From Octopus sinensis (Eukaryota), in assembly GCF_006345805.1 (NCBI RefSeq), contig NC_043025.1:12648001-12712000 (forward strand): a DNA stretch of 64,000 bases, given 5' to 3'. Below are positions 1,411 to 48,341 of the stretch, piece by piece (positions within the stretch are counted from its first letter, which is position 1; every line of letters begins with the position of its first letter). The notes below the pieces were generated by a model. It was not told the DNA's origin, ran no database searches, and saw only the letters and a list, made by a program, of their open reading frames with translations. Both the position numbers and the translations under genes were made by a program.

Positions 1411-1477
1411 AATAAATATTTATTTGAAATTTAAAGAAAGAAAACCATCTGGGCATTGTGGTGAGAGAAGGTAAATT

Positions 1478-2833
1478 ATGGAATGTGAATCGTGTGATGA
1501 TAATGTTGAATGTGGATCGGAATTTAAAAGGACTGGTTTTAGTGATGAAATGCCAATTGACATATGTGATGCATCTGACCAATGTGATATCTGTAAAAAG
1601 TCATATTCTCAGAAAGATATCCTTGCTTCTCACAGATGTATTCACACAGGAGAAAAGCCATATCATTGTGATATCTGTGGTCAATCATTCTCTCAGAAAA
1701 CTAACTTGACCACACACAAACGGATTCATTCTGGAGAGAAACCTTATCGCTGTCACATCTGTGGTCAATCATTCTCTCAAAAAGGTGCACTTGTGACACA
1801 CAGACACACACATACAGGAGAAAAACCATATCACTGTGATATCTGTGGAAAATCATTCACTCGAAATAACTCCCTGACTGTACACAAGCTGATTCATACA
1901 GGGGAAAAACCACATTATTGCGATATCTGTGGGAAATCCTTCTCAGAAACCGGTCCCTTGACTAAACACAAACGCACCCATACGGGTGAGAAGCCGTATC
2001 ACTGTGACATCTGTAGTAAATCATTCTCTGTTAACAGCCATTTAAATAGACACAAACGCATTCATACAGGTGAGAAGCCATATAGATGTGATACCTGTGG
2101 GAAATCATTCTCCGAAGCCGATCCCTTGACTAAGCATATGCGAACTCATACAGGTGAAAAACCGCATCATTGTGATATCTGTGGCAAATCTTTCTCCCGA
2201 AACGATTCTTTAACCACTCATGGATACAGTCATACTGGAGAGAAACCGTATCAGTGTGATATCTGTGGCAAATCATTCACTGAAACTTCACGCTTGACTA
2301 AGCATGTACGAATTCATACAGGTGAGAAGCCATACCACTGCGACATCTGTGGGGAGTCATTTTCGAGGAATGATTCCTTAACGGCTCACAAACACCTCCA
2401 TACGGGAGAAAAGCCGTATCGGTGTAACATTTGTGCTAAATCCTTCTCTCGGAGCAATTCCTTGGTTAAACACAGACACACTCACTCGGGAGAGAAACAA
2501 TATCAGTGTGACATCTGCGGAAAATTGTTCTCCGTAAGTGGCAACTTAACGACGCACAAACGTATTCATACAGGAGAGAGACCATATCACTGTGACATCT
2601 GCGGCAAATCGTTCTCCGACGGAGGCACCTTGACCAGACACAAGCGTATTCATACAGGAGAGAAACCATATGATTGCGATGCCTGTGGAAAATCTTTCTC
2701 CGATGGAGGTACCTTATCTAGGCACAAACGTATTCATACAGGAGAGAAGCCCCATCAGTGTGATATCTGTGGTAAATCATTCTCTCAAAAAGCACAATTG
2801 GCTGCACACATATCCAATCATACAGGAGAATAA
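1478..2833 (+). CDS. C2H2 zinc-finger protein (ZNF1), 15 tandem fingers, 451 aa, single coding exon
   Basis: Open ORF with 15 C-x2-C-x12-H-x3-H units and TGEKPY-type linkers; short acidic N-terminus; no KRAB/BTB/SCAN domain visible. Confidence 0.95.
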   Translation: MECESCDDNVECGSEFKRTGFSDEMPIDICDASDQCDICKKSYSQKDILASHRCIHTGEKPYHCDICGQSFSQKTNLTTHKRIHSGEKPYRCHICGQSFSQKGALVTHRHTHTGEKPYHCDICGKSFTRNNSLTVHKLIHTGEKPHYCDICGKSFSETGPLTKHKRTHTGEKPYHCDICSKSFSVNSHLNRHKRIHTGEKPYRCDTCGKSFSEADPLTKHMRTHTGEKPHHCDICGKSFSRNDSLTTHGYSHTGEKPYQCDICGKSFTETSRLTKHVRIHTGEKPYHCDICGESFSRNDSLTAHKHLHTGEKPYRCNICAKSFSRSNSLVKHRHTHSGEKQYQCDICGKLFSVSGNLTTHKRIHTGERPYHCDICGKSFSDGGTLTRHKRIHTGEKPYDCDACGKSFSDGGTLSRHKRIHTGEKPHQCDICGKSFSQKAQLAAHISNHTGE

Positions 2834-6790: not shown

Positions 6791-7261
6791 GTGTATGTAT
6801 TAGGCTATCAAGAAAGTTCTTGTGGAATTTATCGTTTTAAAACTTGTGTTACTGTTTTTGAATAATGTGGACAAGAAGCAAATTTGCACAACTTTCTTAT
6901 TCCAGTTCTAGCTAGGCCAAGGAGCTGCTGCAACAGCTTCTGATATCAACGATGTGCTTGGCCCTATTTCCATCACACGAATTGTATAACGACCAGATTG
7001 TGAGAGTCAGCTTAGTGGTTGGATGCTGACGAAGCTCCACGGTAGAGAAGTACTGTCAGCAAATGGATGATATGCGTAAGAAGCTCTGACAACAACAGCC
7101 AGCATTGGTCAATAGAAAGGGACCATGGCTACTCTGTTTATTTTTTTTGTGTGCATCTGAATTTAAAGGTTCACAACCACTATAACTTTCTGGATAACCT
7201 AATGTGTGTGTGTATGTATATTTGGTTTGCAAGTGTCTTCTACTATAGCCTCTTTATCACT

Positions 7262-7596
7262 TTCCTCGGCTGTTACTGATGTCTGCCTCTTAGGTGGACG
7301 ACTTCCTTTTGAATGCTCTCGTCTTATGTTTGTTTAGATCCGTTTGTGCAGTGAATTTCTCAGGAACAGTGCTTGATGGAATCTTTAAACAGTTCTGCTT
7401 TTTACCTGAGAATTGCTGCCCCTGTTTTCTTTCATGTTCACTTCTTATCAAATGCGATTGATACAGTTTCTCTTATTTTTGTTGTAGGTATTGCTGTTGT
7501 CGTCGAAGTCAGCTTCCAGAGAGTCGCGGCACTTCACTGGGTGCTATGGGACTGAAGGTGGCCGATGGTTTTAGAAGATGCAATGGTGTCGCTTGT
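7262..7596 (-). pseudogene. Decayed copy of the terminal coding exon of the three-exon gene
   Basis: Aligns in blocks with 22870-23812, including the acceptor (TTACAG); several large internal deletions break the frame. Confidence 0.85.
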
Positions 7597-16323: not shown

Positions 16324-16999
16324 TCACTCGGGTTGAGTATGAATGAAGTTATGTTTAGTCAAGTGTGCTCTTTGAGAGAACGATTTGCCACAGGTATGAC
16401 AAACATAGAGTTTTTCTCCTGTGTGAACACGTTGGTGAGTAGTTAATTGATCGTGGAGAGAGAAAGATTTTCCACAGGTGTCACAGTGGTATGGCTTCTC
16501 ACCTGTATGAATGCGTATGTGAATGGTCAAGCTACCTGTCTGAGTGAACGACTTGCCACAGATGTCACAACGATATGGTTTCTCTCCAGCATGAATGTGT
16601 TTGTGCTTCGTCAGAGCGCTTCCATTCGAGAATGATTTATCACAGGTGTTGCACAGGTAGGGTCTCTCGTCGCTGTGGGTCGTCAGGTTGCCACTCCGCG
16701 AAAACAATTTTCCACAGATGTCACAGTCGTACGGCCTCTCTCCTGTATGAATGTGCCTGTGAGCTGTTAAGTTACCACTTAGAGTGAACGACTTACCACA
16801 GATGTCGCAGTGATAGGGCTTCTCTCCTGTATGAGTACGTTTGTGAATAGAGAGGCTATCTTTGCGAGAAAATGTCTTTTTGCAAACATCACAAGGATAT
16901 GCTATTTTCCCTATATCTTTCGGCATCTCGTCAACAAAATTAATCCTTTTAAGGCACTGATTTACATTTAATATTGTCCTCACACAATTCACTTTCCAT
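16324..16999 (-). pseudogene. C2H2 zinc-finger paralogue (ZNF2): 7 fingers (third broken), frameshifted 5' end; possible 200-aa product from ATG 16926
   Basis: The ATG homologous to the ZNF1 start (16999) reads MESELCEDNIKCKSVP* because it lies 73 nt, not 72 nt, before the EMP methionine. Finger 3 ends LTTHSDERP and lacks its second His. The ORF-track N-terminus (17088) lies in a SINE. Confidence 0.75.
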
Positions 17000-17029
17000 C
17001 TCTCACCGAAATATAATGATGCTTTTCTA

Positions 17030-17185
17030 TTTCTCGGAGTGGTTGTCATTAGGAAGGGCATCCAGCTGTCGAAACTCTTCCAGATCAATATTGGAGCCTG
17101 GTGCAGCCATCAGGTTTGCCAGCCCTCGGTTGAATCGTCCACCCCATGCTAGCATGGAAAGCGGACGTTAAACGATGATGATGAT
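17030..17185 (-). mobile_element. SINE-like repeat family C, partial
   Basis: Reverse complement of TTTAACGTCCGCTTTCCATGCTAGCATGGG...GGATGCCCTTCCTAA. Confidence 0.7.
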
Positions 17186-22606: not shown

Positions 22607-23812
22607 TTACTCAACAAGAGATATATTTTTAATTTTACCAGGATTTACATCTCTAGTCAACCCGTTTTGCACATTTGCTCCAAATTTGAAATTCTTCCCT
22701 GCCTTGTTCCTCCTCGACTTCAAAATCCGCAGAAGTGCCTGGCTTCGCTCTTTCTGCATGAGAGTGATGACAACGTTCTCCTTCGGCGCCTCTTCATCAC
22801 CCTCCTCGCTGTCAACATCCCGACGGTCATGAAGCTCTTCCCCGTTGCATTTAGACGTAACCTTTTCTCGGCTGTCATTGATGTCCGTGTCTTGGGTGGA
22901 CGGCTTCCTTTTGAAGGCTTTCGTCTTGTGTTTGTTTGGATTCTTTGTTGCATTAAAACCTGGGACTTGTACGACAGCACCTGCAGTTGTTGCGTTCCGT
23001 TTGTGAAGTAAATTTGTCAGGAACAGTGCTGAATGCTTGAAAGAATATGGCGAAGGGATCTTTAAACAGTTCTGCTTTTTACCTGAGAATTGCTGCCCCT
23101 GTTTTCTTTCATGTTCGCTTCTTATCAAATGCGATTGGTTCATTTTATTTGATACAGTTTCTCTCATCATTTTTGTTGTAGGTATTGCTGTTGTTCTCAT
23201 CGAAGTCAACAAACTTTGGTCGGCTTCCAGAGAGTCGCGGCACTTTACTGGGTGGTATGGAACTAAAGGCTCGGAAGATTTGAATTTATTAACGAATTGC
23301 GAAGAACCCCAGAATGAAAACTGGTCCGGCGCTGTTGAAACAATCACAAAAGCTTCCATATTGTCGTCAGAAAGTTTTACAGCGTCTTTCACAAAAGAAA
23401 GAATTTCGTTCGCTTTCTCTGAGCGACCTTCGTTTGACAATTCTGTCTGTTCAACTTTTGGAATAACAGTGACAGGAAATTGTTTCTTACTAAGGAATTT
23501 GTCAGCAGAGAGAAGAGATTCTTTGGTAGATCCGTTGCCAGGCATAAAGTTTCTGTGGTTCTGTGTAAGATCCAGAGCTTGGTCCTCGACCTGGTGGAAT
23601 TGGTTGAGATTAGGGACGGCAATGATTGATGCAGTACCATACAGAGATGGAAAAGCATGATTATTATTGTTGTTAGTGGAATAAGCCCAGCCGATGCAAT
23701 TTGAAGAGTTTTTATCAACGTAGCTTTTGTCTCTGCTAGTGTGGTCAATAGTTTTGGAAGATGCAATGGTGTCGCACTGGGATGGCTTGTCATTCTTTCT
23801 CGTTGTGCTTGT
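22607..23812 (-). CDS. Exon 3 (terminal coding exon, 1206 nt) of an uncharacterised three-exon gene
   Basis: The frame stays open 89 codons upstream of the tracked ATG, up to acceptor TTTTTTCCTTAATTACAG; an in-frame TAA lies just inside the intron; phase-0 start; AATAAA candidates near 22370 and 22177. Confidence 0.85.
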   Translation of the reverse strand, partial: TSTTRKNDKPSQCDTIASSKTIDHTSRDKSYVDKNSSNCIGWAYSTNNNNNHAFPSLYGTASIIAVPNLNQFHQVEDQALDLTQNHRNFMPGNGSTKESLLSADKFLSKKQFPVTVIPKVEQTELSNEGRSEKANEILSFVKDAVKLSDDNMEAFVIVSTAPDQFSFWGSSQFVNKFKSSEPLVPYHPVKCRDSLEADQSLLTSMRTTAIPTTKMMRETVSNKMNQSHLIRSEHERKQGQQFSGKKQNCLKIPSPYSFKHSALFLTNLLHKRNATTAGAVVQVPGFNATKNPNKHKTKAFKRKPSTQDTDINDSREKVTSKCNGEELHDRRDVDSEEGDEEAPKENVVITLMQKERSQALLRILKSRRNKAGKNFKFGANVQNGLTRDVNPGKIKNISLVE

Positions 23813-23939
23813 CTGTAATTAAGGAAAAAAACAATTTTATCGATATAAAAAAATAACGATGATAAAAAATTATTGTAACGAAGGCCGGTTAGAATGTCGT
23901 GGGTTCGAGCCCCATACTGACCATGTAACTTTTTATATA

Positions 23940-24240
23940 GGCGCAGGAGTGGTAAGTAGCTTTGTTACCAACCACATGGTTCAGTCCCACTGCGTGGCAC
24001 CTTGAGCAAGTGTCTTCTGCTATAGCCCCGGGCCGACCAATGCGTTGTGAGTGGATTTGGTAGACGGAAACTGAAAGAAGCCCGTCGTATATGTGTGTCT
24101 GTATTTGTCCCCGTTACTTAGCGGTTCGGTAAAAGAGACCGATAAAATAAGTACTGGGCTTACAAAGAATAAGTCCCAGGGTCGAGTTGCTCGATTGAAG
24201 GTGGTGCTGCAGTTAACTGACTGAAACAAGTAAAAGAGTG
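23940..24240 (+). mobile_element. tRNA-derived SINE, family A
   Basis: Head-to-tail match ending GACTGAAACAAGTAAAAGAGT. Confidence 0.8.
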
Positions 24241-25914
24241 CTCAGGTGCGTATAAAACATATGTAGAGAGAAGGAAAGGGAGAGACAAAAAGATATATGT
24301 ATAGAGAGAAGGTCAATACAGTAAAATTTATAGCACCAAGGCACACAGAGCTGCGGTCAGTAGTGTAGTGAAAGCATGTGATGAAGATTAGACTACTGAA
24401 TGATGAGGTAACTCGAATGTAGAGCCTAAAAACAGAAACAATTCCCATTATAGTAGGAACATTAGGTATGATAAGAAAGAACTTCAGACAGAAACTAGCA
24501 CTGCCCACATCCTATGCAAAACACTTTCAATACAGTAACCAGAAGAGCATCACAGAGCTGCGCTCGGTAGTAAAGTGAAAGCACGCTATAAAAGTAAGAC
24601 TACTGAATAATAATGGTTTTAAATAAGGTGGGTGAGCTGACAGAGTTGTTACTATGTCAGACAAAATGCTTAGCATCATTTGTTCAAATTCTACTGAGGT
24701 CGTCTTTGCCGTTCATCCTTTTGGAGTCGACAAATTAAGTGCCAGTGAAATACTGGGGGATGTTGTAATCAACTTTGGCCTTGTACCATAATTTGAAACC
24801 GATAATCGTTTCAAAGTTTGGAACAAGGCCAACAGGTTTTGAGAGAAAGTCGGTTATGTTGAACAAGGAAAGGAAACTCAAACGTATCCAAATTGCCAAC
24901 AGTTCTGTCGGTTTGCTGCCTTGATGATGAGAATAATTTATTTCTTTATTACCCACAGGGGACAGACAATGAAATTAAGTTGATTACATCGACTCCAGTG
25001 TATAACTGGTACTTATTTAATTGACCCATGAAAGGCAAAGTCGACCTCTGCAGAATTTGAAATCAAATTCAATGACTGGCATCTGTGCTAAGACCACCAT
25101 CCAAGTGTGATCGTTGCCAGAGCAACAAACTGGCTTCCGTGCTGGTGGCAAGTAAAAAGCACCATTCAAGCGTGGTCATTGCCAGTACCACCTGACTGGC
25201 CCTCATGCCGGTGGCACATAGGAGCACCCGCTACACTCTCAGAGTCGTTGGCATTAGGAAGGGCTGTAGAAAGTCTGCCAGATCAGATTGGAGCCTGGTT
25301 CGCCAGACCTCAGTCAAATCTTCCAACCCATGCCAGCATGGAAAGCGGACGTTAAACAATGATGATTATAATTCATTTATTGGCCACAAGGGCTTACATT
25401 GAAACAATAATTATAATCTTTTCTACTCTAGGTACAAGGCCTGGATTTTGTGGGGAGTGAGACAGCCAATCACTTCGACCACAATACTCAACTGGAACTT
25501 AATTTATGAAAGGTGAACTCGGAACATAAAGGCAGATGAAATACCACAAAGCATTTCGCCAGGTGTGCTAACGATTCTGCCATAATAATTTCTACTCAAA
25601 GCACAAGGCCCTGAAAATTTTGGGGGAAGGAGTATAGTCAAATACATTGACACCAGTGCTTATTTCGACCCTGAAAGGCAAAGCTGACCTTGGCGGAATT
25701 TGAACTCAAAATACTGCTAACCATTTTACCTGGCATGCTAACGATTGTGCCACAAAGGCAGCTATTTTGGGGAAGGGGATAAGTCGATTACATCGACCCC
25801 CCCAGTGTTTCACTGGTACTTAATTTATCACCCCCGAAAGGATGATAGCCATAAAACAACAGTGGAACTTGGGGCAGTTCTCAGGCTTGCCAGCTCTTGT
25901 TAAATGTATATATA

Positions 25915-26225
25915 GGCGCAGGAGTGGCTGTGTGGTAAGTAGCTTGCTTACCAACCACATGGTCCCGGGTTCAGTCCCACTGCGTGGCACTGTGAGCAAG
26001 TGTTTTCTACTATAGCCTAGTGAGTGGATTTGGTAGACTGAAAGAAGCCCGTTGTATACATGCGTTTGTCCCCCGATGCTGGTGTGTTTATGTCCCCGTT
26101 ACTTAGTGGCTTGGCAAAAGAAACCGATAGAATAAGTACCAGGCTTACAAAGAATAAGTCCTGGGGTCGATTTGCTTGACTAAAGGTGGTGCTGCAGTCA
26201 AATGACTGAAACAAGTAAAAGAGTA
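25915..26225 (+). mobile_element. tRNA-derived SINE, family A
   Basis: Head-to-tail match. Confidence 0.8.
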
Positions 26226-26249
26226 TATAGGTTTTGGGTGAGTATTTCT

Positions 26250-27680
26250 TTAAATATAAGAAAGAATTTAGTAAAATAACTTAGTTATCATTCAGCTAGT
26301 GTTAGGAACATAAATTGTGACTAAAGTTTGGTGGAAGATTTTAATTCAAAACTTTTGAAAACAAGACATTTGTACTACAGAGCCAGAAGTGGTTTCAGCC
26401 AGGTTGGTATCAAAAGGGTTAAGAATTGTTTCTCTATTATATATCTTAACCCTTTTGTTACCATATTTCTTCTGTTGAGATGCTCTGTGTTTCTTTCAAT
26501 TAATTTTAAATATAACAAAGAATTTAGTAAAATAACTTAGTTATCATTCAGCTAGTGTTAGGAACATAAATTGTGACTAAGGTTTGGTGGAAGATTTTAA
26601 TTCAAAACTTTTGAAAACAAGACATTTGTACTACAGAGCCAGAGGTGGTTTCAACCAGGTTGGTATCAAAAGGGTTAAGAATTGTTTCTCTATTATATAT
26701 CTTAACCCTTTTGTTACCATATTTCTGTTGAGATGCTCTGTGTTTCTTTCAATTAATTTTAAATATAACAAAGAATTTAGTAAAATAACTTAGTTATCAT
26801 TCAGCTAGTGTTAGGAACATAAATTGTGACAAGGTTTGGTGGAAGATTTTAATTCAAAACTTTTGAAAACAAGACATTTGTACTACAGAGCCAGAGGTGG
26901 TTTCAACCAGGTTGGTATCAAAAGGGTTAAGAATTGTTTCTCTATTATATATCTTAACCCTTTTGTTACCATATTTCTGTTGAGATGCTCTGTGTTTCTT
27001 TCAATTAATTTTAAATATAACAAAGAATTTAGTAAAATAACTTAGTTATCATTCAGCTAGTGTTAGGAACATAAATTGTGACAAGGTTTGGTGGAAGATT
27101 TTAATTCAAAACTTTTGAAAACAAGACATTTGTACTACAGAGCCAGAGGTGGTTTCAGCCAGGTTGGTATCAAAAGGGTTAAGAATTGTTTCTCTATTAT
27201 ATATCTTAACCCTTTTGTTACCATATTTCTGTTGAGATGCTCTGTGTTTCTTTCAATTAATTTTAAATATAACAAAGAATTTAGTAAAATAACTTAGTTA
27301 TCATTCAGCTAGTGTTAGGAACATAAATTGTGACAAGGTTTGGTGGAAGATTTTAATTCAAAACTTTTGAAAACAAGACATTTGTACTACAGAGCCAGAG
27401 GTGGTTTCAACCAGGTTGGTATCAAAAGGGTTAAGAATTGTTTCTCTATTATATATCTTAACCCTTTTGTTACCATATTTCTGTTGAGATGCTCTGTGTT
27501 TCTTTCAATTAATTTTAATATAACAAAGAATTTAGTAAAATAACTTAGTTATCATTCAGCTAGTGTTAGGAACATAAATGTGACAAGGTTTGGTGGAGAT
27601 TTTAATTCAAAACTTTTGAAAACAAGACATTTGTACTCAGAGCCAGAAGTGGTTTGAGCCAGGTTGGTATCAAAAGGATG
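26250..27680 (+). repeat. Tandem array of a piggyBac-like MITE plus short spacer, 252-bp period, about 5.6 copies
   Basis: Repeated ORFs at 26584/26836/27088/27340 give the period; unit runs TTAACCCTTTTGTTACCA...TGGTATCAAAAGGGTTAA plus GAATTGTTTCTCTATTATATATC. Confidence 0.9.
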
Positions 27681-28094
27681 AAAGGAAACGTGAAACTCCA
27701 AGTAATGTCTTTGCAGCTTTTTAATAAAATATATATATATCTGTAAATTGTGTCTTTGTGTTAGTGTTTATACCACTTGACAACTGGTGTTAGTGTCTTT
27801 ACATCCCTATAACTTAGCAGTTCAGCAAAGGTGACTGATAGAATAAGTGCCAGGCGTTTAAAAAACCATAAGCCCTGGGGTAGATTTTATTCAACTAAAA
27901 ACCCTTGAAGGTGGTGCTCCAGCATGGCCACAATCTATTGACTGAAACGAGTAATAGATTACTACACGTGACCCTCCCTTAAGGTAACAGAGTTCGATTT
28001 GAGGGAGACGTGGCTGTGATTTCTAGAGGTCTGAGCGAATTGGACATACTGAAAGTTGGAGTTTTCTTGATTGTGTAATTTAAGTGTGACTTAC

Positions 28095-28270
28095 CTTGAC
28101 CCTGTTGACGAGGTTCTTTTTGGGCGGGACCCAATTGACATTTGGGGGTACGTGCCTTCCCGTCACGTCGACCTCCCAGTTGCCAATGTTGTGGAGGTAC
28201 ATCCGCATGTTGACACGGAACGAACAACGATGGCCACTTTTCGCTCGTTTCTCATCTTTCTTCAGGCAAT
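28095..28270 (-). CDS. Exon 2, copy b (176 nt): (D)CLKKDEKRAKSGHRCSFRVNMRMYLHNIGNWEVDVTGRHVPPNVNWVPPKKNLVNRVK
   Basis: Acceptor TTTCTGTTTTTCTCTTTTCCACAG and donor AAG/GTAAGT; phase 1 in, phase 0 out, matching exons 1 and 3. Confidence 0.85.
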
Positions 28271-29265
28271 CTGTGGAAAAGAGAAAAACAGAAATATACA
28301 AGAAATCGAAATGAACCAATCCTATGACTGGCACCCGGCAGATGCCAGGACCCCTGGACTGGTGGTACGTAAAAAGCACTATCCAACTCGTGGCCGATGC
28401 CAGCGCCGCCTCGACTGGCTTCCGTGCCGTTGGCATGTAAAATGCGCCAATCCGACCGTTGCCAGCCTCGCCTGGCACCTGTGCAGGTAGCACGTAAAAA
28501 GCACCCACTACACTCACGGAGTGGTTGGTGTTAGGAAGGGCATCCAGCTGTAGAAACATTGCCTGGTGCAGCCTCCTGGCTTCCCCGGTCGAACCGTCCA
28601 ACCCATGCTAGCATGGAAAGCAAACATTAACCCTTTGTCACCATATTTCTGCTGAGATGCTCTGTGTTTCTTTCAATTATTTTAAATATAACAAAGAATT
28701 TAGTAAAATAACTTAGTTATCATTAAGCTAGTGTTAGGAACATAAATTGTGACTAAGGTTTGGTGGAAGATTTTAATTCAAAACTTATGAAAACAAGACA
28801 TTTGTACTACAGAGCCAGAGGTGGTTTGAGCCAGGTTGGTATCAAAAGGATGAAAGGAAACGTGAAACTCCAAGTAATGTCTTTGCAGCTTTTTAATAAA
28901 ATATATATATATCTGTAAATTGTGTCTTTGTGTTAGTGTTTATACCACTTGACAACTGGTGTTAGTGTCTTTACATCCCTATAACTTAGCAGTTCAGCAA
29001 AGGTGACTGATAGAATAAGTGCCAGGCGTTTAAAAAACCATAAGCCCTGGGGTAGATTTTATTCAACTAAAAACCCTTGAAGGTGGTGCTCCAGCATGGC
29101 CACCGACTAATGACTGAAACGAGTAATAGATTACTACACGTGACCCTCCCTTAAGGTAACAGAGTTCGATTTGAGGAGACGTGGCTGTGATTTCTAGAGG
29201 TCTGAGCGAATTGGACATACTGAAAGTTGGAGTTTTCTTGATTGTGTAATTTAAGTGTGACTTAC

Positions 29266-29441
29266 CTTGACCCTGTTGACGAGGTTCTTTTTGGGCGGGA
29301 CCCAATTGACATTTGGGGGTACGTGCCTTCCCGTCACGTCGACCTCCCAGTTGCCAATGTTGTGGAGGTACATCCGCATGTTGACACGGAACGAACAACG
29401 ATGGCCACTTTTCGCTCGTTTCTCATCTTTCTTCAGGCAAT
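29266..29441 (-). CDS. Exon 2, copy a (176 nt), identical to copy b by eye
   Basis: Same acceptor, donor and coding sequence at offset +1171. Confidence 0.8.
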
Positions 29442-30019
29442 CTGTGGAAAAGAGAAAAACAGAAATATACAAGAAATCGAAATGAACCAATCCTATGACT
29501 GGCACCCGGCAGATGCCAGGACCCCTGGACTGGTGGTACGTAAAAAGCACTATCCAACTCGTGGCCAATGCCAGCGCCGCCTCGACTGGCTTCCGTGCCG
29601 TTGGCATGTAAAATGCGCCAATCCGACCGTTGCCAGCCTCGCCTGGCACCTGTGCAGGTAGCACGTAAAAAGCACCCACTACACTCACGGAGTGGTTGGT
29701 GTTAGGAAGGGCATCCAGCTGTAGAAACATTGCCTGGTGCAGCCTCCTGGCTTCCCCGGTCGAACCGTCCAACCCATGCTAGCATGGAAAGCAAACATTA
29801 ACCCTTTTGTTACCATATTTCTGTTAAGATGCTCTGTGTTTCTTTCAATTATTTTAAATATAACAAAGAATTTAGTAAAATAACTTAGTTATCATTCAGC
29901 TAGTGTTAGGAACATAAATTGTGACGAAGGTTTGGTGGAAGATTTTAATTAAAAACTTATGAAAACATGACATTTGTACTCAGAGCCAGAGGTGGTTTCA
30001 GCCGGGTTAAACAATGATG

Positions 30020-30520
30020 ATGATCCAGCCTGCCAATGGTAACAGGCAGACCACATGGGTACAGACACCATGCAAAAAGCACCCAGATCGCTCTGCAAAA
30101 AAAAGGGTTCATCTTAGAAAAGGTGTTCAGACTTAAAAGCTATGCCAAAGCAGACCTCACTAGTGCTGGGGCCACATAAAAAGCACCCAGTCCTCTTTGT
30201 AAAAGTGCCAGCATTAGGAAGGGCATCCAGCTGTAAAAGCCCTATTGCCAAAGTAGACCTCTGGTGCTGGTACCATGTAAAAAGTAACCAGTCCACTCTG
30301 GAAAGTGGGTGGCATTAGGAAGGGTGTCCAGTTATAAAAGCCATGCCAAAGCAGACCTCTCTGGTGCCACATTAAATGCTCCCAGCCCACTCCATAAAGT
30401 CGTTAGCATTAGGAAGGGTCCCTAATTGTAGAAACCATGTCAAAGCAAACCTCACTGGTGTTGGTGCCATGTAAAAAAAGCACCCAGTCCACTTTGTAAT
30501 TTGGGCACCCAGCCCTAAAA
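30020..30520 (-). repeat. Degenerate tandem array (about 100 bp) derived from SINE family C
   Basis: Repeated AAAAGCACCCAGTCC...GCATTAGGAAGGG...CCATGCCAAAGCAGACCTC blocks. Confidence 0.6.
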
Positions 30521-31204
30521 AAAGAGCTGGCAATTGAACTGCCCCAAATTCCCCTGTTGTTATGGCTGGGTGCCCTTCCTGATATTTCTGCTTGAACACC
30601 TCCGTGCTGAAATGTCATGGAAAATAGGCCTCAGTTTCAAAACATTGATGTCAAGGTCTGAAAGGAATAATTATCATTTCTGTTGATTACTCGAAAAAAG
30701 CCAATAGGAAATAACACTTACTAAACAAAACTTTAAAATTTGTTAGTGGTGGTGACGATGGTGTTACTATTGTTGTTGGTGGCGGTGACAGGCGCAAACA
30801 TTGTTTTTGCCTTTGATTTAATCAACAAAACCACTTTCCCCACATCCTTGTATCTGGAATTTCCGTCCAGGAAGAAATATATGAACAGGGAACGACCTGC
30901 ATAAATTCCCTTACTACAGAAATAAAGTTAATTAAAAGCCTAAATATCTGATGTATATTATAATTAAGATTATTATTTAGCACTTTCATCATTAGACCAA
31001 AAAACATTGGGTTTTCTAAAAATATTTACTGTTATAAACCCAAACTCGAATAGCAAAGTTTAAAAGGTTTTAAGCAACTAAAAATACAGCAATATACAAT
31101 ACGAACAAAGATTGCTAAATTGTAAGCAAAACCAAACTTCAACACAATAACATTTTTATGCAGCGAGTTGCTATATTCTGGACTAATTAAAATCAACATG
31201 AGGA

Positions 31205-31500
31205 ATATCTGAAGGAGAATTCATCTCCGAAGCAATTGCCCCAGCTCCCCTTCAGGGTTGTCGAAAGCAATGTGGTGGTGGACAACGAAAAACCTGGCTG
31301 ATCTGGAACCCAACCTAGGCCTGCCCATGTCTACGGTGTTCGCCGCTGGAATAAGGAGTGGTTGGAGATCACGCGGTCGTTGGCCTCAAATCGCCAGGCC
31401 TGGTCGGCGTTTGTGAGAGATGCAGCATTGAGGATGAATGAAGCCAGCTCAACCCACCCCGGGTGGATGCTGTCTCAAGACAAGACAAAAACTAAAATCC
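31205..31500 (+). mobile_element. RTE-type LINE 3' end
   Basis: WNKEWLEITRSLASNRQAWSAFVRDA (RTE-like W...A.DR..W...V terminus); same family as 60930-61570. Confidence 0.65.
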
Positions 31501-31589
31501 ACGCTGAAAACGTCTGCAAACAACAGAACAGAACTCTGTGCAGTGCGACTGCACACATATAGCAACAATCAAAATCACGTATACAAAAC

Positions 31590-32370
31590 TAAAATCAAGG
31601 TACACTATGCATGAATAAAAGACAGGATGGTCACAACTGGAACATCTTTTAAATCATACCTCTGCTGGATCTAAGCTGACCAGGGGCTAAACAATAACAA
31701 GAAGGACACATTAAATCATGTAGCCCTAGATACACTATGCATGAATAAAAGATGGGATGGTCGCAACTGGAACATCTTTTAAATCATAGCTCTGCTGGAT
31801 CTAAGCTGACCAGGGGCTAAACAACAAGGGCGACACATTAGATAATGTAGCCCTAGATACACTATGCCTGAATAAAAGACAGGATGGTCACAGCTGGAAC
31901 ATCCTTTAAATCATAGCTCTGCTGGATCTAAGCTGACCAGGGGCTAAACAACAAGGGAGGCACATTAGATAATGTAGTCCTAGATACACTATGCCTGAAT
32001 AAAAGACAGGATGGTCGCAACTGGGACATCTCTGATCATGGGTTTGCTGGATCAGGACTGACCTGGGGCTAAACAACAACAAGGAAGGACACGTTAGATA
32101 ATGTAGTCCTAGATACACTGTGCCTGAATAAAAGACGCGATGGTCACAACTGGAGCATCTTTTCAATCATAGCTCTGCTGGATCTAAGCTGACCAGGGGC
32201 TAAACATCAACAAAGGGGGTCAAATTGAATGATAAATGTAGAGCAAGATGGGTTTGGCTGTGTCTGGTAAAAGAAAGCAAAGAAACGGAATAATAGGATT
32301 GTCCATAGTCAGAACGATGTCTTTGAATCCAGGGCTGCTGCTGGATCTCAGCTAACCTGGCTCTAAATAT
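31590..32370 (-). repeat. Minisatellite, about 120-bp degenerate unit
   Basis: Repeated TAGATACACTATGCCTGAATAAAAGAC...GCTGGATCTAAGCTGACCAGGGGCTAAAC; inverse of 38150-39200. Confidence 0.85.
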
Positions 32371-32810
32371 TAGCATCTTTATCGGCGTCAGCATCACTAT
32401 CGTAATTAGCATCATAATTGTCACTATCATCTTGATTACCATCACCGTTATTATTATCATTATTATCTTTTCTCGTTATTATATTCAATGTGGCTATCAC
32501 CATCATCGTCGTCATCTTCATCATTGCTGACAGCATCATCAACAACAAACATCTTCGTCGTTGTTGGCTCCAGCGATAGTGAAATCAAAATAAACAAACC
32601 AGACGAAGTGAATGAACCAAGGAATAATTGAAAGAGGCTGACGATAGGAAGACGGACGGGGAAGATACAAAGAAATGAAAACGAAGAAGATAAGAGATAA
32701 AGAAAGGCAGAAGATGAAAAGAAAAAAGAGAAGGGTGGGAAAAAAGGGTGACAAGAAAGAAAGTAAAAAAGAAGGGAATAATGAAAGTGAAACAAAGCGA
32801 TTCCACTCAC

Positions 32811-33198
32811 CGTCTCTGCACCGCCCCATTCCACCGCACTCCCTTTCACAGTTCATTTGACCGCTACACATAAGGATCTCTTTGGCCACCCAGATGCGCC
32901 GACCTAGTTTCTGCAAGTGGGCCCACGGCTGGACCCCATTATCATTGCTGCTATTATTGTTGTAAGAGGCGGCAGCGGTGGACGTGGTGGTGGTGGCGGC
33001 TGTGACCGCCGTTGGACGGATTCGAACGCGGTCCGACAGGAAGCCGTCGTTGCCTTTCTCCACGTACACAATGTCGTTCTTCACCTCCCGGCCTTTCCTT
33101 ATGATTCTGCCCCGTCTGAAGTCTGCGATGTCGTGTAGGTAACCCCTGAGTTCCTCTTCTTTCACGGTCACTGCCGTCGTGTTCCGCCGCTGTGGCAT
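32811..33198 (-). CDS. Exon 1 (388 nt coding): MPQRRNTT...VQPWAHLQKLGRRIWVAKEILMCSGQMNCERECGGMGRCRD
   Basis: ATG with A at -3 in a GC/CpG-rich island; donor GACG/GTGAGT in phase 1; G+AT completes Asp with exon 2. Confidence 0.8.
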
Positions 33199-33439: not shown

Positions 33440-33668
33440 AACACACACCTATCTATCTATTTATCCATATATCTGTATGTTTGTTTGTCTATCTATCCAT
33501 CTATCTACGTATCTGTCTATCCATCCATCTATCTGTCTATCTATCTATCTATCCACCTATATACCTACCTACCTACCTATCTATCCATCCATCCATCCAT
33601 CTATCTATCTATCTGTCTGTCTATCTGTGTCTACCTATCTATCTATCTACCTACCTATCTATCCATCC

Positions 33669-33708
<40 letters not shown>

Positions 33709-33734
33709 GTCTGTCTGTCTATCTGTCTGTCTAC

Positions 33735-33780
<46 letters not shown>

Positions 33781-33860
33781 GTCTGTCTATCCATCTATCT
33801 ATCTCTCTATCTATCCATCTCTCTATCTATCCATCTACCTACCTACTTATCTATCGATAG
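33440..33860. repeat. Compound (TCTA/TCCA/TCTG/CCTA)n microsatellite
   Basis: Read directly from the sequence. Confidence 0.95.
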
Positions 33861-34039
33861 ATAATTATCCAAGGTGTACAGTATTATATATCTATCACAA
33901 CCACTTTATTCACAGATATACGAGTGCATCATTTTCCTGTTTTATAGACTTTTAAACTACTAAAACATAAATAGGATCTTTTCACTTTCCCATATATATA
34001 CAAAGATATATACGTTCAGTTATACGAAGATATATACAC

Positions 34040-34242
34040 ACTTATTCATACATATATGCATTCATACAAAAAAACACACATGCGTGCATGTATGTATACG
34101 CACATGTATGAATGTATATTCATGCATACATACATTTATACGTATATACAAATATACATACATGCAATATACACAAACATACATTCATATACAGCGGTGG
34201 TGCCCCAGCATGGCCGCGGCCTTTGGGCTAAAACATTTTAAA

Positions 34243-34323
<81 letters not shown>

Positions 34324-34392
34324 TGTATATACATGTGTAGCATGGCAGTGTCAAAACAATATTGCTACACATGCACACACTACATACTTCCA

Positions 34393-34435
<43 letters not shown>

Positions 34436-35880
34436 GCATCCTGATATATATATATACACTCATGCGTACACTCACACAGACAGACACACTCACTAACGCG
34501 CACTCAACTCCACAGCAAGTACAGATACGTGCACGCGCTCACAAACGCACGCATGCACTCACTCACACATACACATTCACGCCTTCACTCACAACAATGA
34601 CCACACTCTCCCTTACATGCATACACACGCGCACACACAGAGCAGCATATACACAAACAACGACACATACACTCACGCAAAATACTACATATATATACAC
34701 ACACGCAATACAACAAAACACATTCACTCACAAGCACAATGTATACACACACACACACTACGATATACACGTGCAACTCTCATTCACACAACCTTAATAT
34801 ATACACACGCAACACATATACACACACACGCACAATCTCAACATACATATATATATACACACACGTAACAAACACATACATTCTCTCTTATATACACACT
34901 TCATGTTCACATACAAACACCACAAAACAATATATATATACTCACACACTCTCACATATAAATAGCCTATACACACCCTACACACAACACAACATTTACA
35001 TATATACACACTTTCTCTCTCATATACACACTTATGATCACACACAACAGGAAACACTATACACTCTCTCTCACACATACATACTCTCAACATATACACA
35101 CACACGTACAACACAAAACATCATTCTCTCATATACACGCACGACTTCAATATATATATATATATATATACACACACGCAATACAACAAAACACATTCAC
35201 TCACAAGCACAATGTATACACACACTACGATATACACGTGCAACTCTCATTCACACAACCTTAATATATACACACGCAACACATATACACACTCTCTCTC
35301 ATAATCACACCCATGTTGACACAATAACGATCTTTCCACACACACAATCTCAACATACATATATATATACACGCACAAACAATATAAAACATCACACAAA
35401 CTTTATCTCATATTCATACACACAAACAAACACTATTTATATATACACACAAACACTATATATATATATATATATATATACAAACACTATTTATATACAC
35501 ATACAAACACTATTTATATATACACACATACAAACACTATTTATATACACACACATACAAACACTATTTATATACACACACATACAAACACTATTTATAT
35601 ATATATACACTCTCTCATAATCACACCCATTTTCACAAACACAGCCAAAACGAAACACATATACACACACACGCACAATCTCAACATACATATACACGCA
35701 CTAACTTCTCTCATATTCACACACACACAAACACTATTCATATATATATATATATACACACACAACTTCAATACATATACACAATACAGCAGGGGGAAAA
35801 AAACCCGACACTCTCACAAACACATTCACACACACACACGTATACGTACGCACAGACACCTATACACACACACGCACTCG
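34040..35880. repeat. (TA)n and degenerate (CA)n low-complexity block with internal duplications
   Basis: Read directly; includes a re-duplicated block (about 34690-34830 vs 35160-35290) and short CAAACACTATTTATATACAC tandem units at about 35420-35610. Confidence 0.9.
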
Positions 35881-36714
35881 TTCACACTTTACCCTCCCAT
35901 CTCCTCTCGGACTTTCCTCTCCCATTTCCAAATCCGACATTCGGTCTTGGACAAGAGACGAGAAGAAGGGAAACCGATGTATAATGTGCGCACGTGTATC
36001 TTTTACTTGTTTCAATTACTGAATTGTGGCCATGCTGGGGCCATGAACATTTTTTTTAGTCAAATTTATCGACCCCAGGACTCGTATTTTCTTTTAAGAC
36101 TAGTAATTATTTTATCGGTCTGTTTCGCCGAACTGCTAAGTTACCTGGTCATAGACACACCAATACTGACTGTGAAGCGGTGGTGAGACACACACACACA
36201 CACAATATACGACGGGCTTCTTTCAGTTTCCAACTACCAAATCCACTCAAGGCTTTGGTCAGCCCTAGGCTATATCGTAGAAGGCACTGCTAAGTTAACT
36301 GGTCATAAACACGCCAATATTGGCTGTGAAGCGGTGGTGAGACACACACGCAAAATACGACGGGCTTCTTTCAGTTTCCATCTACCAAATCCACTCGAGG
36401 CTTTGGTCAGCCCGAGGCTATATAGCAGAAGACACTTTTATCGGTCTCTTTTACCGAACTGCCAAGTTACCTGGTCATAAACACGCCAATATTGGTTGTC
36501 AAGCGGTCATGAGACACACACACAAAATACGACGGGCTTCTTTCAGTTTCCACTTTAAAAAATTCAAGAAAAAAAATGAAAAATAAGGATAACTTAGCAG
36601 GCGTGGCTGTGTGGTAAGAAGGCTGCTTCCCAACTGCATGTATCCGGGTTCAATTCCACTTCGTGAAAGTGTTTTCTGTTATAGCCCCGGATCGATCAAA
36701 GCCTTGTGAGCAGA

Positions 36715-47780: not shown

Positions 47781-47963
47781 CAGACATCGAAGTAGTTCAG
47801 ACGCTCATAAAAGACAAATTTGGATGAATGACATCAAAGGAGTGGAAAAATTAATAAAAAAGGATCCCACAAAAGTTGTTCTGTTTATTGCCTTCTCAAA
47901 TTTAACTGTTTTTAGGGAGTATAATTGAAAACTTTACCATGTAAGAATCAATTTTGACCGAGT

Positions 47964-48341
47964 ATGTTGGTCGAAATAATTCAAGAAGCAAACCAGCTGG
48001 ACGAGCCAGCAAAAAAGTTTGCGGCAGTAGCCGCTGTGTCTTCAAGAGGTATTATGATTGAAACAGAGAAGCTCTTTGAGCTTTTCCAGAGAATGAAAGA
48101 GGAGGGTGGGGATATAAAGATCTCACCCTCCCCTAGTGTTGAAAATATGAAGAGGACAGTCGTTTACAAAACGTACCATCTTTCATCAAAAAAATTTAAG
48201 CACTTCGAAAAGTGTGAATGTGAAATAGAAAAATACCTGGTCCCTATATGGAAAGATATAAAATGCATAGTGAGGGGCCGGGCATATGGAACAATAAAGG
48301 CCAGATTCAAGACGGACGAAAAGCGCACGAGCACTCAGTGA
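47964..48341 (+). mobile_element. LINE ORF1-like (RRM-type) fragment; second copy at 59318-59730
   Basis: VPIWK..YI.R..YGTI..RF..D.EA..HS...LKTKEVVLLPTY parallels the zinc-knuckle ORF1 at 62028. Confidence 0.55.

What the first reader, a model, noticed from the sequence alone, without database searches (positions are those of the whole stretch)
22607..33198. Hidden three-exon gene encoding a 589-aa protein with an unusual Cys/His zinc cluster, possibly a GCM/WRKY-like DNA-binding factor
Seen: exons 33198-32811 (388 nt), 28270-28095 (176 nt) and 23812-22607 (1206 nt) have canonical GT-AG sites with matching phases (1 then 0). They total 1770 nt, i.e. 589 aa plus stop. The exon 1/2 junction builds one continuous motif: W-AHLQKLGRRIW-x4-ILMCSGQMNCERECGGMGRCRDDC-x13-C-x23-H-VPP (6 Cys plus His). 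Known: GCM domains carry a C-x-G-x3-C start and a G-x-H-x-H-P end and bind two zinc ions; WRKY, FLYWCH and MULE-derived DNA-binding domains use C...C-x22/23-H spacing. Inference: this is a divergent WRKY-GCM1-fold transcription factor or a domesticated transposase DNA-binding domain. The CxRxCGGxGxC core does not match a named family I can identify, and no catalytic transposase domain follows it.
Basis: partly seen in the sequence, partly recalled or inferred. Interest (0 to 1): 0.9.

Follow-up and report, generated by a model that had tools for sequence, protein, structure and literature searches.

The report
Transposase-derived zinc-domain gene in octopus
This is a real, strongly conserved three-exon octopus gene whose zinc-binding front end is the same domain that Mutator-like jumping genes of fungi and mussels carry ahead of their transposase, so it is most likely a DNA-binding regulator born from a transposon; it is already predicted in public annotations but neither the gene nor its domain has been described.

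Summary
The three minus-strand exons have GT/AG sites and compatible phases, and give 589 aa. Public models in O. vulgaris (99% identical) and O. bimaculoides (85%) use the same junctions, so the gene is not hidden. An intronless transcript contig from another cephalopod carries the orthologue. dN/dS is 0.14 overall and 0.01 in the Cys/His module.

The motif is part of a conserved unit of about 180 aa: an N-terminal module plus a zinc module with eight invariant ligands (C111, C117, C121, C127, C131, H143, C145, H169). No Pfam family or PDB sequence matches it.

The same unit heads multi-copy Mutator-like/SWIM transposases of Glomeromycota fungi and Mytilus. A profile built only from host proteins finds them at E 1e-17 to 1e-26. 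One Rhizophagus copy has 177-bp terminal inverted repeats and a 10-bp target duplication. The "domesticated transposase DNA-binding domain" reading is therefore well supported.

The WRKY/GCM reading is not demonstrated. Predicted strands place the ligands as in that fold, but Foldseek and hhalign are non-significant, and the true GCM gene lies elsewhere in the genome.

Exon 2 is tandemly duplicated in this assembly only. This is a new variant of a known kind, of moderate interest.

The parts
32811..33198 (-). Exon 1 (coding part). It runs from ATG at 33198 through aa 1-129 plus the first base of codon 130. It encodes the N-terminal module (aa 10-62, 33171-33013), a Thr/Asn-rich linker (aa 63-93) and the first half of the zinc module with C111, C117, C121 and C127.
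   Evidence: The donor is GTGAGT. The same junction is used in the O. vulgaris and O. bimaculoides models.
28095..28270 (-). Exon 2, copy nearer exon 3 (176 nt). It encodes aa 130-188: C131, H143, C145, W161, G167, H169 and the 'VPP...WVPP' tail of the zinc module.
   Evidence: It has an AG acceptor and a GTAAGT donor.
29266..29441 (-). Exon 2, duplicate copy. It is identical in sequence and in both splice sites to 28095-28270.
   Evidence: Including both copies gives a stop at codon 191, so only one copy can be used. O. vulgaris (L013) and O. bimaculoides (L012) have a single exon 2.
27533..29872 (.). Tandem duplication of a unit of about 1171 bp (27533-28700 and 28701-29872) that carries exon 2. 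The two units are 98.6% identical, with 11 mismatches and 6 indels, all outside the exon.
22607..23812 (-). Exon 3 (1206 nt including the TAA stop). It encodes aa 189-589: a low-complexity, probably disordered tail with basic patches and a few motifs conserved across cephalopods (for example 'EAFVIVS...FSFWG' and 'LMQKERSQALLRIL').
   Evidence: Identity to O. bimaculoides is 88% with dN/dS 0.17. The profile hit to P0008 covers profile positions 275-415.
28101..32919 (-). Span encoding the zinc module (aa 94-186), interrupted by intron 1. Invariant residues are C111, C117, C127, C131, H143, C145, G167 and H169. C121, G113, R119 and G122 are conserved in at least 90% of family members.
22630..22645 (-). 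Internal GT donor (CCTG|GTAAAA) 27 nt before the stop. An annotated O. vulgaris isoform (P0003) uses it to join this gene to the downstream C2H2 zinc-finger exon.

Best explanation
The locus is a functional host gene of an Octopus vulgaris-group genome, one of at least four paralogues.

Its first 190 residues or so are a domesticated copy of the N-terminal, presumably DNA-end-recognising, unit of a Mutator-like (MULE/SWIM) DNA transposase. The unit has two parts:
- a well-folded module of about 55 aa (strand, two helices, three strands, helix);
- a zinc module of about 90 aa with eight invariant ligands, enough for two Zn2+ ions.

The likely ligand partition (inferred, not shown) has two sites. 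One is a WRKY-type site formed by C111 at the end of a strand, H143 and C145 at the start of the next strand, and H169 at the end of the last strand. The other is a CxxxC-x5-CxxxC knuckle (C117, C121, C127, C131) in the insert between them. This repeats the logic of GCM1.

The catalytic RNase-H-like and SWIM parts of the transposase are gone. A 400-aa disordered tail replaces them.

The protein most likely works as a nuclear, sequence-specific DNA-binding regulator. The zinc unit reads DNA and the tail recruits partners.

Shown: the gene structure, conservation, purifying selection, homology to transposase N-termini, and the transposon nature of those relatives. Inferred: zinc binding, DNA binding, the WRKY-GCM1-like fold, and the direction of transfer from transposon to host.
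For: Gene reality:
- Canonical splice sites and phases.
- Identical junctions in two annotated species.
- An intronless orthologous transcript contig.
- dN/dS 0.01 in the zinc module, 0.12 in the N module and 0.17 in the tail.
- Three further paralogous loci (one in two tblastn pieces only) with the same exon 1/exon 2 split in the same genome.

Family:
- 57 library-wide hits at E<=1e-3, from molluscs, a brachiopod, echinoderms and amphioxus. All are uncharacterised or named only by automatic annotation after fused domains.
- Eight ligand positions are invariant or nearly invariant in 41-42 sequences.

Transposase link:
- P0039 (836 aa) has the unit, then weak MULE / ZSWIM1-3 RNase-H-like matches, then a CxCx13CxH SWIM motif.
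- Its relatives are multi-copy proteins of Gigaspora, Rhizophagus, Diversispora and Cetraspora, named MULE-transposase or SWIM-domain-containing. A Mytilus edulis protein, P0130, belongs with them.
- A profile built only from non-transposase animal proteins hits their N-termini over the whole unit at E 1e-17 to 1e-26, scaled to 1.8e9 sequences.
- The Rhizophagus copy is flanked by 177-bp inverted repeats and a 10-bp direct duplication, TGTCACTAAT. The Mytilus copy has 90-bp inverted repeats that are 99% complementary.
- In the tree, the gephyrin-linked host clade is sister to the Mytilus transposases (UFboot 95) and lies next to the fungal ones.

Fold:
- AlphaFold gives mean pLDDT 80 (about 95 in the N module). 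Strand 16-23 ends at the first Cys, strand 61-67 starts after the last Cys, and strand 74-79 ends before the last His.
- This is the ligand placement described for WRKY-GCM1 domains. Those domains are the usual N-terminal DNA-binding domain of MULE transposases that carry a C-terminal SWIM (PMC1702500).
Against: - There is no direct evidence for zinc or DNA binding.
- No significant sequence, profile or structure match to any known DNA-binding domain was found.
- Pfam MULE matches on the transposase relatives are recurrent but all below the curated cut-off, at 17-23 bits against 27.6.
- No transposase of this clade was found in the octopus genome itself.
- The octopus gene sits in a 'short-linker' clade separated from the transposase-containing clade, and the tree is unrooted. 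The direction of transfer for this particular clade is therefore inferred.
- The C-terminal HxH/HxC dyad typical of WRKY-GCM1 domains is missing.
- No transcript evidence was available from this species itself.
Confidence: 0.7

Rival explanations
1. The unit is transposase-derived, but its zinc module is a fold of its own rather than a WRKY-GCM1 derivative. The similarity to GCM (C-x-G-x3-C-x3-C start, G-x-H end) is convergent, as is common among small Cys-rich modules.
For: - Foldseek of both models against 350,542 PDB chains gives no hit at E<=0.001. WRKY chains appear only at E 3-7 with TM about 0.34, and GCM is not listed.
- hhalign probabilities are 0.2% against GCM and 0.8% against WRKY.
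- No Pfam WRKY, GCM, FAR1, FLYWCH or MuDR DNA-binding-domain hit was found in 42 members.
- Only three long strands are predicted instead of four, and there is a single terminal His.
Against: - The placement of ligands on the strand ends matches the published description of the fold.
- The WRKY-GCM1 - MULE - SWIM architecture is the norm for this transposon superfamily.
- The best hhalign local alignment, though not significant, falls in the expected strand 3 / strand 4 / G-x-H register.
- Small zinc domains modelled without metal are poor Foldseek queries (my own knowledge).
Confidence: 0.35
2. The protein is not a DNA-binding regulator. The zinc unit mediates protein-protein, RNA or small-molecule interactions, for example a role linked to molybdenum-cofactor or gephyrin biology, as its frequent fusion to gephyrin G domains in other phyla might suggest.
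For: - At least 13 relatives from molluscs, a brachiopod and echinoderms carry an N-terminal MoCF_biosynth domain (by eye).
- In Diadema the unit lies between the gephyrin G and E domains.
- No DNA-binding family is matched.
Against: - The octopus gene and its three paralogues have no MoCF domain.
- In transposases the N-terminal unit is expected to recognise element ends (established knowledge of MULEs; PMC1702500).
- One paralogue family ends in a leucine-zipper-like coiled coil, typical of transcription factors (sequences; the coiled coil is read by eye).
Confidence: 0.12
3. The locus is a decaying transposon relic or an annotation artefact that happens to have open frames and splice-like sites.
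For: The window is rich in repeats, SINE-like fragments and transposon ORFs. Exon 2 is duplicated, and a degenerate exon-3-like fragment lies downstream.
Against: - dN/dS is 0.01-0.17 with dS about 0.34.
- Structure is conserved at the orthologous loci of two other species.
- A full-length transcript exists in a more distant cephalopod.
- The frame stays intact over 589 codons.
Confidence: 0.02
4. It is a divergent orthologue or paralogue of the GCM (glial cells missing) transcription factor family.
For: It shares the C-x-G-x3-C-x3-C spacing after a hydrophobic strand, and the G-x-H near the end. Compare 'EILMCSGQMNCEREC' with octopus GCM 'ILKKSCLGVLVCSLDC'.
Against: - Pfam GCM gives no match.
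- The genome has a bona fide GCM gene at C8:49814104-49815247, E 5e-35.
- hhalign against it aligns 10 columns at probability 0.2%.
- The H-x-H-P ending and the CxxC of the GCM zinc ribbon are absent.
Confidence: 0.01

Closest known systems
FAR1/FHY3 and FRS proteins of plants; Aft1/Rcs1 of yeast (transcription factors derived from MULE transposases)
   Same: The host genes keep the N-terminal zinc-dependent DNA-binding unit of a Mutator-like transposase. In the fungal cases they have lost the catalytic part (PMC1702500). The evolutionary logic is the same as here.
   Different: FAR1/FHY3 retain the MULE core and SWIM domains, whereas the octopus protein keeps only the N-terminal unit. There is no detectable sequence similarity to the FAR1 domain: PF03101 is silent on all 42 members and in the genome. 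The donor transposon clade also differs (Glomeromycota and bivalves).
GCM domain (glial cells missing; PF03615, PDB 1ODH)
   Same: It is an animal two-zinc DNA-binding domain in which a second zinc-binding module is inserted between the first two ligands of a WRKY-type site. The first three Cys have the same C-x-G-x3-C-x3-C spacing, and a G-x-H follows the last strand.
   Different: There is no profile or fold-search similarity. The insert here is a short CxxxC-x5-CxxxC knuckle rather than the GCM zinc ribbon. There is a single terminal His. The unit has an extra N-terminal module, and its relatives are transposases.
WRKY domain and the insert-containing WRKY-GCM1 domains of MULE transposases (Babu et al. 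2006)
   Same: The position N-terminal to a MULE core with a C-terminal SWIM is the same. Ligands fall at the end of one strand, the start of the next and the end of the last. There is an insert between the two Cys. Animal members have a conserved Trp in the last strand (W161).
   Different: Similarity is not statistically detectable. No WRKYGQK-like first strand was identified. An H-x-C dyad before strand 3 seems to replace the terminal HxH/HxC. The Trp is not conserved in the fungal transposases (alignment).
Host-transposase fusion genes formed by alternative splicing to a captured transposase DNA-binding exon
   Same: Relatives of this unit are fused behind gephyrin G domains in many invertebrates, and next to PUS3 in Biomphalaria. 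An O. vulgaris isoform joins this gene to a C2H2 exon.
   Different: The octopus gene itself is stand-alone. The concept is recalled from my own knowledge of the vertebrate literature and was not verified in a paper here (one search found none in the library).

Membership tests
GCM family (PF03615) | Significant match to the GCM domain profile | tested here: not met
   There is no GCM hit for the protein or for any of 42 family members, even at E<=10. hhalign against the genome's own GCM domain gives probability 0.2% over 10 columns. The true GCM gene is at C8:49.81 Mb.
GCM family (PF03615) | Terminal G-x-H-x-H-P ligand dyad and a CxxC-containing zinc ribbon in the insert | tested here: not met
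   The family consensus ends G-x-H-[VNI]-x with no second His or Cys. The insert has C-x3-C-x5-C-x3-C.
WRKY-GCM1 superfamily | Four-stranded sheet with Cys at the end of strand 2, Cys at the start of strand 3 and His at the end of strand 4 | tested here: inconclusive
   The AlphaFold model (pLDDT 81) has three long strands with C111, C145 and H169 in those positions. Foldseek against the PDB is not significant: WRKY chains score E 3-7 with TM 0.34.
WRKY-GCM1 superfamily | Detectable profile similarity to WRKY, FAR1, FLYWCH or GCM | tested here: not met
   Pfam is silent. hhalign against a 5-sequence WRKY alignment taken from PDB chains gives probability 0.8%, E 0.069, over strand 3 / strand 4 only.
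WRKY-GCM1 superfamily | Occurs as the N-terminal domain of MULE transposases that end in a SWIM finger | tested here: met
   P0039, P0084, P0085, P0091-P0094 and others have the unit at the N-terminus, a MULE-like core, and CxCx13CxH near the C-terminus.
Mutator-like (MULE) transposon origin | Relatives carry a MULE-type DDE/RNase-H-like catalytic domain | tested here: inconclusive
   PF10551 MULE and/or PF21056 ZSWIM1-3 RNase-H-like hit 6 of 9 proteins tested, in the same region. All hits are below the cut-off, at 17-23 bits against about 27.5. Precomputed Pfam tables and UniProt names call several relatives MULE or SWIM.
Mutator-like (MULE) transposon origin | Multi-copy elements with long terminal inverted repeats and a target-site duplication of about 8-11 bp (the range is from my own knowledge) | tested here: met
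   Clusters hold up to 50 member sequences in Rhizophagus. L019 has 177-bp inverted repeats at 88% plus a 10-bp duplication, TGTCACTAAT. L020 (Mytilus) has 90-bp inverted repeats at 99%, but no duplication was found there.
Domesticated (exapted) transposase gene | Orthologues at the corresponding locus in other species, purifying selection, and loss of catalytic domain and terminal repeats | tested here: met
   One three-exon locus with the same junctions is present in each of the O. vulgaris and O. bimaculoides assemblies. dN/dS is 0.14 overall and 0.01 in the zinc module. There is no transposase domain in the protein. Flanking-gene synteny was not compared.

The most novel reading that the evidence does not exclude
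The 180-aa unit is a previously unrecognised two-zinc DNA-binding fold that is not a WRKY-GCM1 derivative. It defines both a new clade of Mutator-like transposons shared by arbuscular mycorrhizal fungi and bivalves and a new family of transcription factors in several invertebrate phyla (molluscs, a brachiopod, echinoderms, amphioxus). It was captured several times independently, including a widespread fusion to the gephyrin G domain that could couple molybdenum-cofactor status to gene regulation.
Probability: 0.2. Interest if true: 0.75.

Novelty: new variant of a known kind. Interest (0 to 1): 0.55.

Why it matters
Transcription factors born from transposase DNA-binding domains are a known route to new regulators. 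This unit, however, is absent from Pfam (2025 copy) and from the PDB, and I found no description of it in the searchable literature.

It is conserved under very strong constraint in cephalopods and has expanded to at least four genes in octopus. It is also present in other molluscs, a brachiopod, echinoderms and amphioxus. Its transposase-bearing relatives are found in two very distant groups, Glomeromycota and mussels.

If confirmed as a DNA-binding domain, it would add a new family to the repertoire of animal transcription factors. It would give a handle on uncharacterised cephalopod regulators. It would also document repeated capture by host genes such as gephyrin, and possibly a case of long-range horizontal spread of a MULE clade.

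Tried and rejected
- Pfam on the spliced protein: nothing except a noise hit to DTHCT at E 6.
- phmmer and a profile search against PDB sequences: nothing relevant. The only hits were ribosomal L19e at E 0.19 and gallin at E 0.38.
- Pfam on all 42 unit sequences at E<=10: only scattered noise. DUF7348 matched in 7 members; in the one examined it was a 14-residue stretch. wHTH-PRTase_assc matched in 3 members.
- Foldseek against the PDB with the whole-unit model and with the zinc-module model: best E 0.6 and 1.7, on unrelated folds.
- hhalign of the zinc-module alignment against octopus GCM and against WRKY: not significant.
- Search for FAR1 (PF03101) in the genome, to build a comparison set: none found.
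- Search for a P0039-like transposase in the octopus genome: none found.
- Word-index protein search restricted to the unit of P0012: only 7 hits, all bivalve or brachiopod, all unnamed.
- Literature searches found no description of the family: gephyrin + transposase + domesticated; Mutator-like + Rhizophagus; LOC106884181; host-transposase fusion.
- Rfam on the window: no RNA family.
- I first misread two copies of exons 2 and 3 in O. bimaculoides. That was an artefact of two loci sharing one FASTA file, and I corrected it.
- No target-site duplication was found at the Mytilus element ends.

Full report

Yes. On the minus strand the three segments are as described:
- 33198-32811 (388 nt), starting at ATG;
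- 28270-28095 (176 nt);
- 23812-22607 (1206 nt), ending in TAA.

Donors are GTGAGT and GTAAGT, and both acceptors follow a polypyrimidine tract ending in AG. The phases are 1 then 0. Joined, the exons give 1770 nt, or 589 codons plus a stop. Codon 130 is split across intron 1, so the Cys cluster is only continuous after splicing.

The window has about 40% G+C, contains C2H2 zinc-finger arrays and SINE-like repeats, and matches no Rfam family. It lies at C29:12648001-12712000 of a 2.72-Gb assembly.

**2. Is the gene real and functional?**

A word-index search returned three proteins:
- 'Hypothetical predicted protein [Octopus vulgaris]' (P0001, 591 aa, 99% identical, full length);
- 'uncharacterized protein LOC106884181 [Octopus bimaculoides]' (P0002, 621 aa, 85%);
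- an O. vulgaris isoform (P0003) that joins exons 2-3 to a C2H2 exon.

I fetched the two orthologous loci (L013, L012). Each has one copy of each exon, and the published proteins are reproduced by the same junction positions. The gene is therefore not hidden, only unnamed.

A 3802-nt Logan contig (SRR8281678, L014) carries an uninterrupted 616-aa ORF. It is 80% identical to the window protein in the zinc module and colinear over the whole length. The octopus gene has introns of 4-5 kb, so I take this contig as a spliced mRNA of another cephalopod. That reading is an inference, because the nature of the run was not checked.

Nei-Gojobori estimates against O. bimaculoides:

| Region | dN | dS | dN/dS |
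|---|---|---|---|
| Whole gene | 0.047 | 0.34 | 0.14 |
| N-terminal module | | | 0.12 |
| C-terminal tail | | | 0.17 |
| Zinc module | 0.0045 | 0.44 | 0.01 |

In the zinc module, 92 of 93 residues are identical.

**3. Anatomy of the protein**

A profile of the two octopus orthologues was searched against 1.84 billion representative proteins. It gave 57 hits at E<=1e-3. The hits align to two parts of the query: positions about 10-63 and positions about 113-200.

From these hits I built a 42-sequence alignment of the whole unit (A2) and a 41-sequence alignment of the zinc module (A3).
- Invariant, in protein numbering: C111, C117, C127, C131, H143, C145, G167, H169.
- Conserved in at least 90%: C121, G113, R119, G122.

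The consensus is L-x-C-x-G-x-x-x-C-x-R-x-C-G-G-x-G-x-C-x-x-x-C ... H-x-C-x-x-x-V ... W-x-V-x-x-x-G-x-H. This gives eight potential ligands, enough for two tetrahedral zinc sites.

The remaining 400 aa (exon 3) are low-complexity, with a few short motifs shared with other cephalopods (the hit to P0008). No Pfam family covers any part of the protein.

**4. Paralogues and relatives**

The same genome holds further loci with the same exon 1/exon 2 split:
- C29:13.46 Mb (matches P0006, which shows about 2 aa differences in the aligned part);
- C14:41.63-41.65 Mb (matches P0010);
- C26:20.99-21.01 Mb.

Named relatives come from Pomacea, Mytilus, Biomphalaria, Aplysia, Lingula, Amphiura, Diadema and Branchiostoma. 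They are labelled uncharacterised, or are named after a fused domain.

At least 13 relatives carry an N-terminal MoCF_biosynth (gephyrin G) domain; seven of these were confirmed with Pfam here or by precomputed tables and the rest I read by eye. In Diadema the unit lies between the gephyrin G and E domains. In Biomphalaria it precedes a PUS3 pseudouridine synthase.

**5. The transposase link**

This is the key result.

Hit P0039 (836 aa) has the unit at its N-terminus. It then shows weak matches to MULE (E 9e-4) and ZSWIM1-3 RNase-H-like (E 3e-4). Near the C-terminus it has 'CTCFDFIWNGSFRDVCKH', a CxCx13CxH SWIM signature.

Its relatives are 47 proteins of Gigaspora, Rhizophagus, Diversispora, Cetraspora, Scutellospora and Racocetra (Glomeromycota), plus two of unnamed origin and one of Mytilus edulis (P0130). 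Several are multi-copy, with up to 50 members per 90% cluster. Several are named 'MULE transposase domain-containing' or 'SWIM-type domain-containing', and some carry precomputed PF10551/PF21056 hits. My own Pfam scans find the MULE or ZSWIM match in 6 of 9 proteins, always below the curated cut-off. I therefore call them a divergent Mutator-like clade rather than certified MULEs.

An HMM built only from the 35 animal sequences of A2 left after removing two transposases and five metagenome fragments of unknown source hits the N-termini of these transposases. The hits cover both modules (HMM 5-156) at E 1e-17 to 1e-26 with Z set to 1.8e9. Homology of the whole unit is therefore secure.

The elements are real transposons:
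- The Rhizophagus copy (L019) is bounded by 177-bp inverted repeats (88%) and a 10-bp direct duplication, TGTCACTAAT.
- The Mytilus copy (L020) has 90-bp inverted repeats that are 99% complementary. No target duplication was found there.

An IQ-TREE of the unit places the gephyrin-linked host proteins as sister to the Mytilus transposases (UFboot 95), next to the fungal transposases. The octopus gene falls in a separate 'short-linker' clade with its paralogues, a Pomacea protein and an amphioxus protein. The tree is unrooted. Capture from a transposon is strongly suggested for the gephyrin-linked clade and inferred by extension for the octopus clade. No transposase of this type was found in the octopus genome.

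**6. Is it a WRKY/GCM-type finger?**

Babu et al. 2006 (PMC1702500) describe WRKY-GCM1 domains as follows. [quoted passage not shown] In GCM1 a zinc ribbon is inserted between the two Cys. These domains are the usual N-terminal domain of MULE transposases ending in a SWIM finger.

AlphaFold2 with my alignments gives the following:

| Model | Mean pLDDT | pTM |
|---|---|---|
| Whole unit | 80 (about 95 in the N module) | 0.71 |
| Zinc module alone | 80.7 | 0.59 |

In the zinc-module model, a strand ends at C111, a strand starts just after C145, and a strand ends three residues before H169. A 33-residue insert in between bears C117, C121, C127, C131 and H143. This mirrors the published ligand placement and the GCM1 logic. 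It suggests a C111/H143/C145/H169 site plus a C117/C121/C127/C131 knuckle. That partition is my inference, because I had no access to the coordinates.

Every statistical test failed:
- Foldseek against the PDB gave no hit below E 0.6. WRKY chains scored E 3-7 and GCM was absent.
- Pfam WRKY, GCM, FAR1 and FLYWCH were silent on all members.
- hhalign gave probability 0.2% against the genome's own GCM domain and 0.8% against WRKY. The latter alignment did fall in the expected strand 3 / strand 4 / G-x-H register.
- The terminal HxH/HxC dyad is missing.

Membership in the GCM family is therefore rejected. Membership in the WRKY-GCM1 superfamily is plausible but unproven; I put it at roughly 40-50%.

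**7. How it most likely works**

The protein is most likely a nuclear DNA-binding regulator. The two-module, two-zinc unit, inherited from a transposase that used it to recognise its element ends, binds specific DNA. The disordered tail carries localisation and partner-binding motifs.

Indirect support comes from extreme constraint on the zinc module, an invariant Arg in C-x-R-x-C-G-G, and basic residues in the N module ('RKGREVK'). One paralogue family (P0004, P0010) also has what looks by eye like a leucine-zipper-type coiled coil at its C-terminus.

Zinc and DNA binding are not shown. Rival readings are scored in the Rival explanations section: a new fold, a non-DNA function linked to gephyrin, a transposon relic, and a GCM paralogue.

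**8. The exon-2 duplication**

A 1.17-kb unit containing exon 2 is present twice in tandem (27533-28700 and 28701-29872, 98.6% identical). The exon and both splice sites are identical between the copies. Using both copies gives a stop at codon 191, and skipping both gives a stop at codon 137.

The O. vulgaris chromosome-level assembly and O. bimaculoides each have one copy. The duplication is therefore either very recent or an assembly artefact, and I cannot tell which.

An unplaced contig (C9468) holds a diverged second copy of exon 2 and exon 3, 91-93% identical at the protein level, with a frame break.

**9. Novelty and verdict**

Domestication of transposase DNA-binding domains is well known. 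What is new is this particular domain, its donor transposon clade and its pattern of host captures. It has no Pfam or PDB counterpart, and no literature was found.

I rate it a new variant of a known kind, with interest 0.55. Its 'domesticated transposase domain' alternative is supported. Its 'GCM/WRKY' label is unproven at the superfamily level and wrong at the family level. 'Hidden' is wrong.

Noticed in passing
window 27533-29872: A 1.17-kb tandem duplication carries two identical copies of exon 2 with identical splice sites. It is absent from the O. vulgaris (L013) and O. bimaculoides (L012) loci. Using both copies would truncate the protein at codon 191.
   Followed up: partly
window 26249-27677 and 31601-32210: The introns hold satellite-like tandem arrays: a 252-bp unit in 5.7 copies (98% matches) in intron 2, and a 127-bp unit in 4.8 copies in intron 1. 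Parts of the 252-bp unit recur at 28679 and 29851, at the borders of the exon-2 duplication.
   Followed up: no
window 33449-33855 and 34000-36000: A (CTAT)n microsatellite of about 100 units lies 250 bp upstream of the start codon. Beyond it is a 2-kb stretch that is strongly C-over-G skewed (GC skew -0.59) and looks AC-rich from the ORF translations.
   Followed up: no
window 7260-7558 (minus strand): A degenerate exon-3-like fragment lies about 15 kb downstream of the real exon 3. It shows 53-88% identity to aa 182-317 of the exon-3 product and contains a stop. The same arrangement (exon 3, then a decayed copy about 14 kb on) is seen on the unplaced contig C9468.
   Followed up: partly
G000:C9468:24849-44385 and G000:C9:19564148-19564402: A diverged second copy of exon 2 (97% aa) and exon 3 (91-93% aa, with a frame break) sits on a 72-kb unplaced contig. 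A further 85-aa exon-3 fragment (94%) lies on another chromosome. This may be a segmental duplicate or pseudogene rather than a haplotig.
   Followed up: partly
window 16324-17109 (minus), 1475-2833 (plus), 22637: C2H2 zinc-finger arrays flank the gene. An annotated O. vulgaris isoform (P0003, 'zinc finger 239-like') uses a GT 27 nt before the stop of exon 3 to splice onto the downstream C2H2 exon. That would give a protein with part of the zinc module plus classical fingers.
   Followed up: partly
window 50067-51032 (plus): A 321-aa open frame matches the ISXO2-like DDE transposase domain (PF12762, E 2e-16), a different transposon family from the one discussed here.
   Followed up: partly
window 47958-48341, 59312-59800, 61998-62645 (plus): These are related open frames of a repeated element. 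The last contains a CCHC-type knuckle (CYKCGEKGYIRSSC), suggesting a retroelement Gag. No Pfam hit was found.
   Followed up: no
relatives P0012, P0014-16, P0020, P0023, P0024, P0028, P0029, P0033, P0034, P0037, P0043, P0133: In a brachiopod, bivalves, gastropods and echinoderms, the same unit is fused behind a gephyrin-type MoCF_biosynth G domain. In Diadema it sits between the G and E domains of a full gephyrin. This suggests alternative exons inside the gephyrin gene that derive from a captured transposase.
   Followed up: partly
relatives P0039, P0084-P0130; loci L019, L020: Closely related transposases with this N-terminal unit occur in arbuscular mycorrhizal fungi (multi-copy) and in Mytilus. 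That is an unusually disjunct distribution and could reflect horizontal transfer. The Rhizophagus copy has 177-bp inverted repeats and a 10-bp target duplication.
   Followed up: partly
relative P0004 and cluster (Logan transcripts): A relative of the C14 paralogue carries two complete tandem copies of the unit, followed by what looks by eye like a leucine-zipper-type coiled coil.
   Followed up: no
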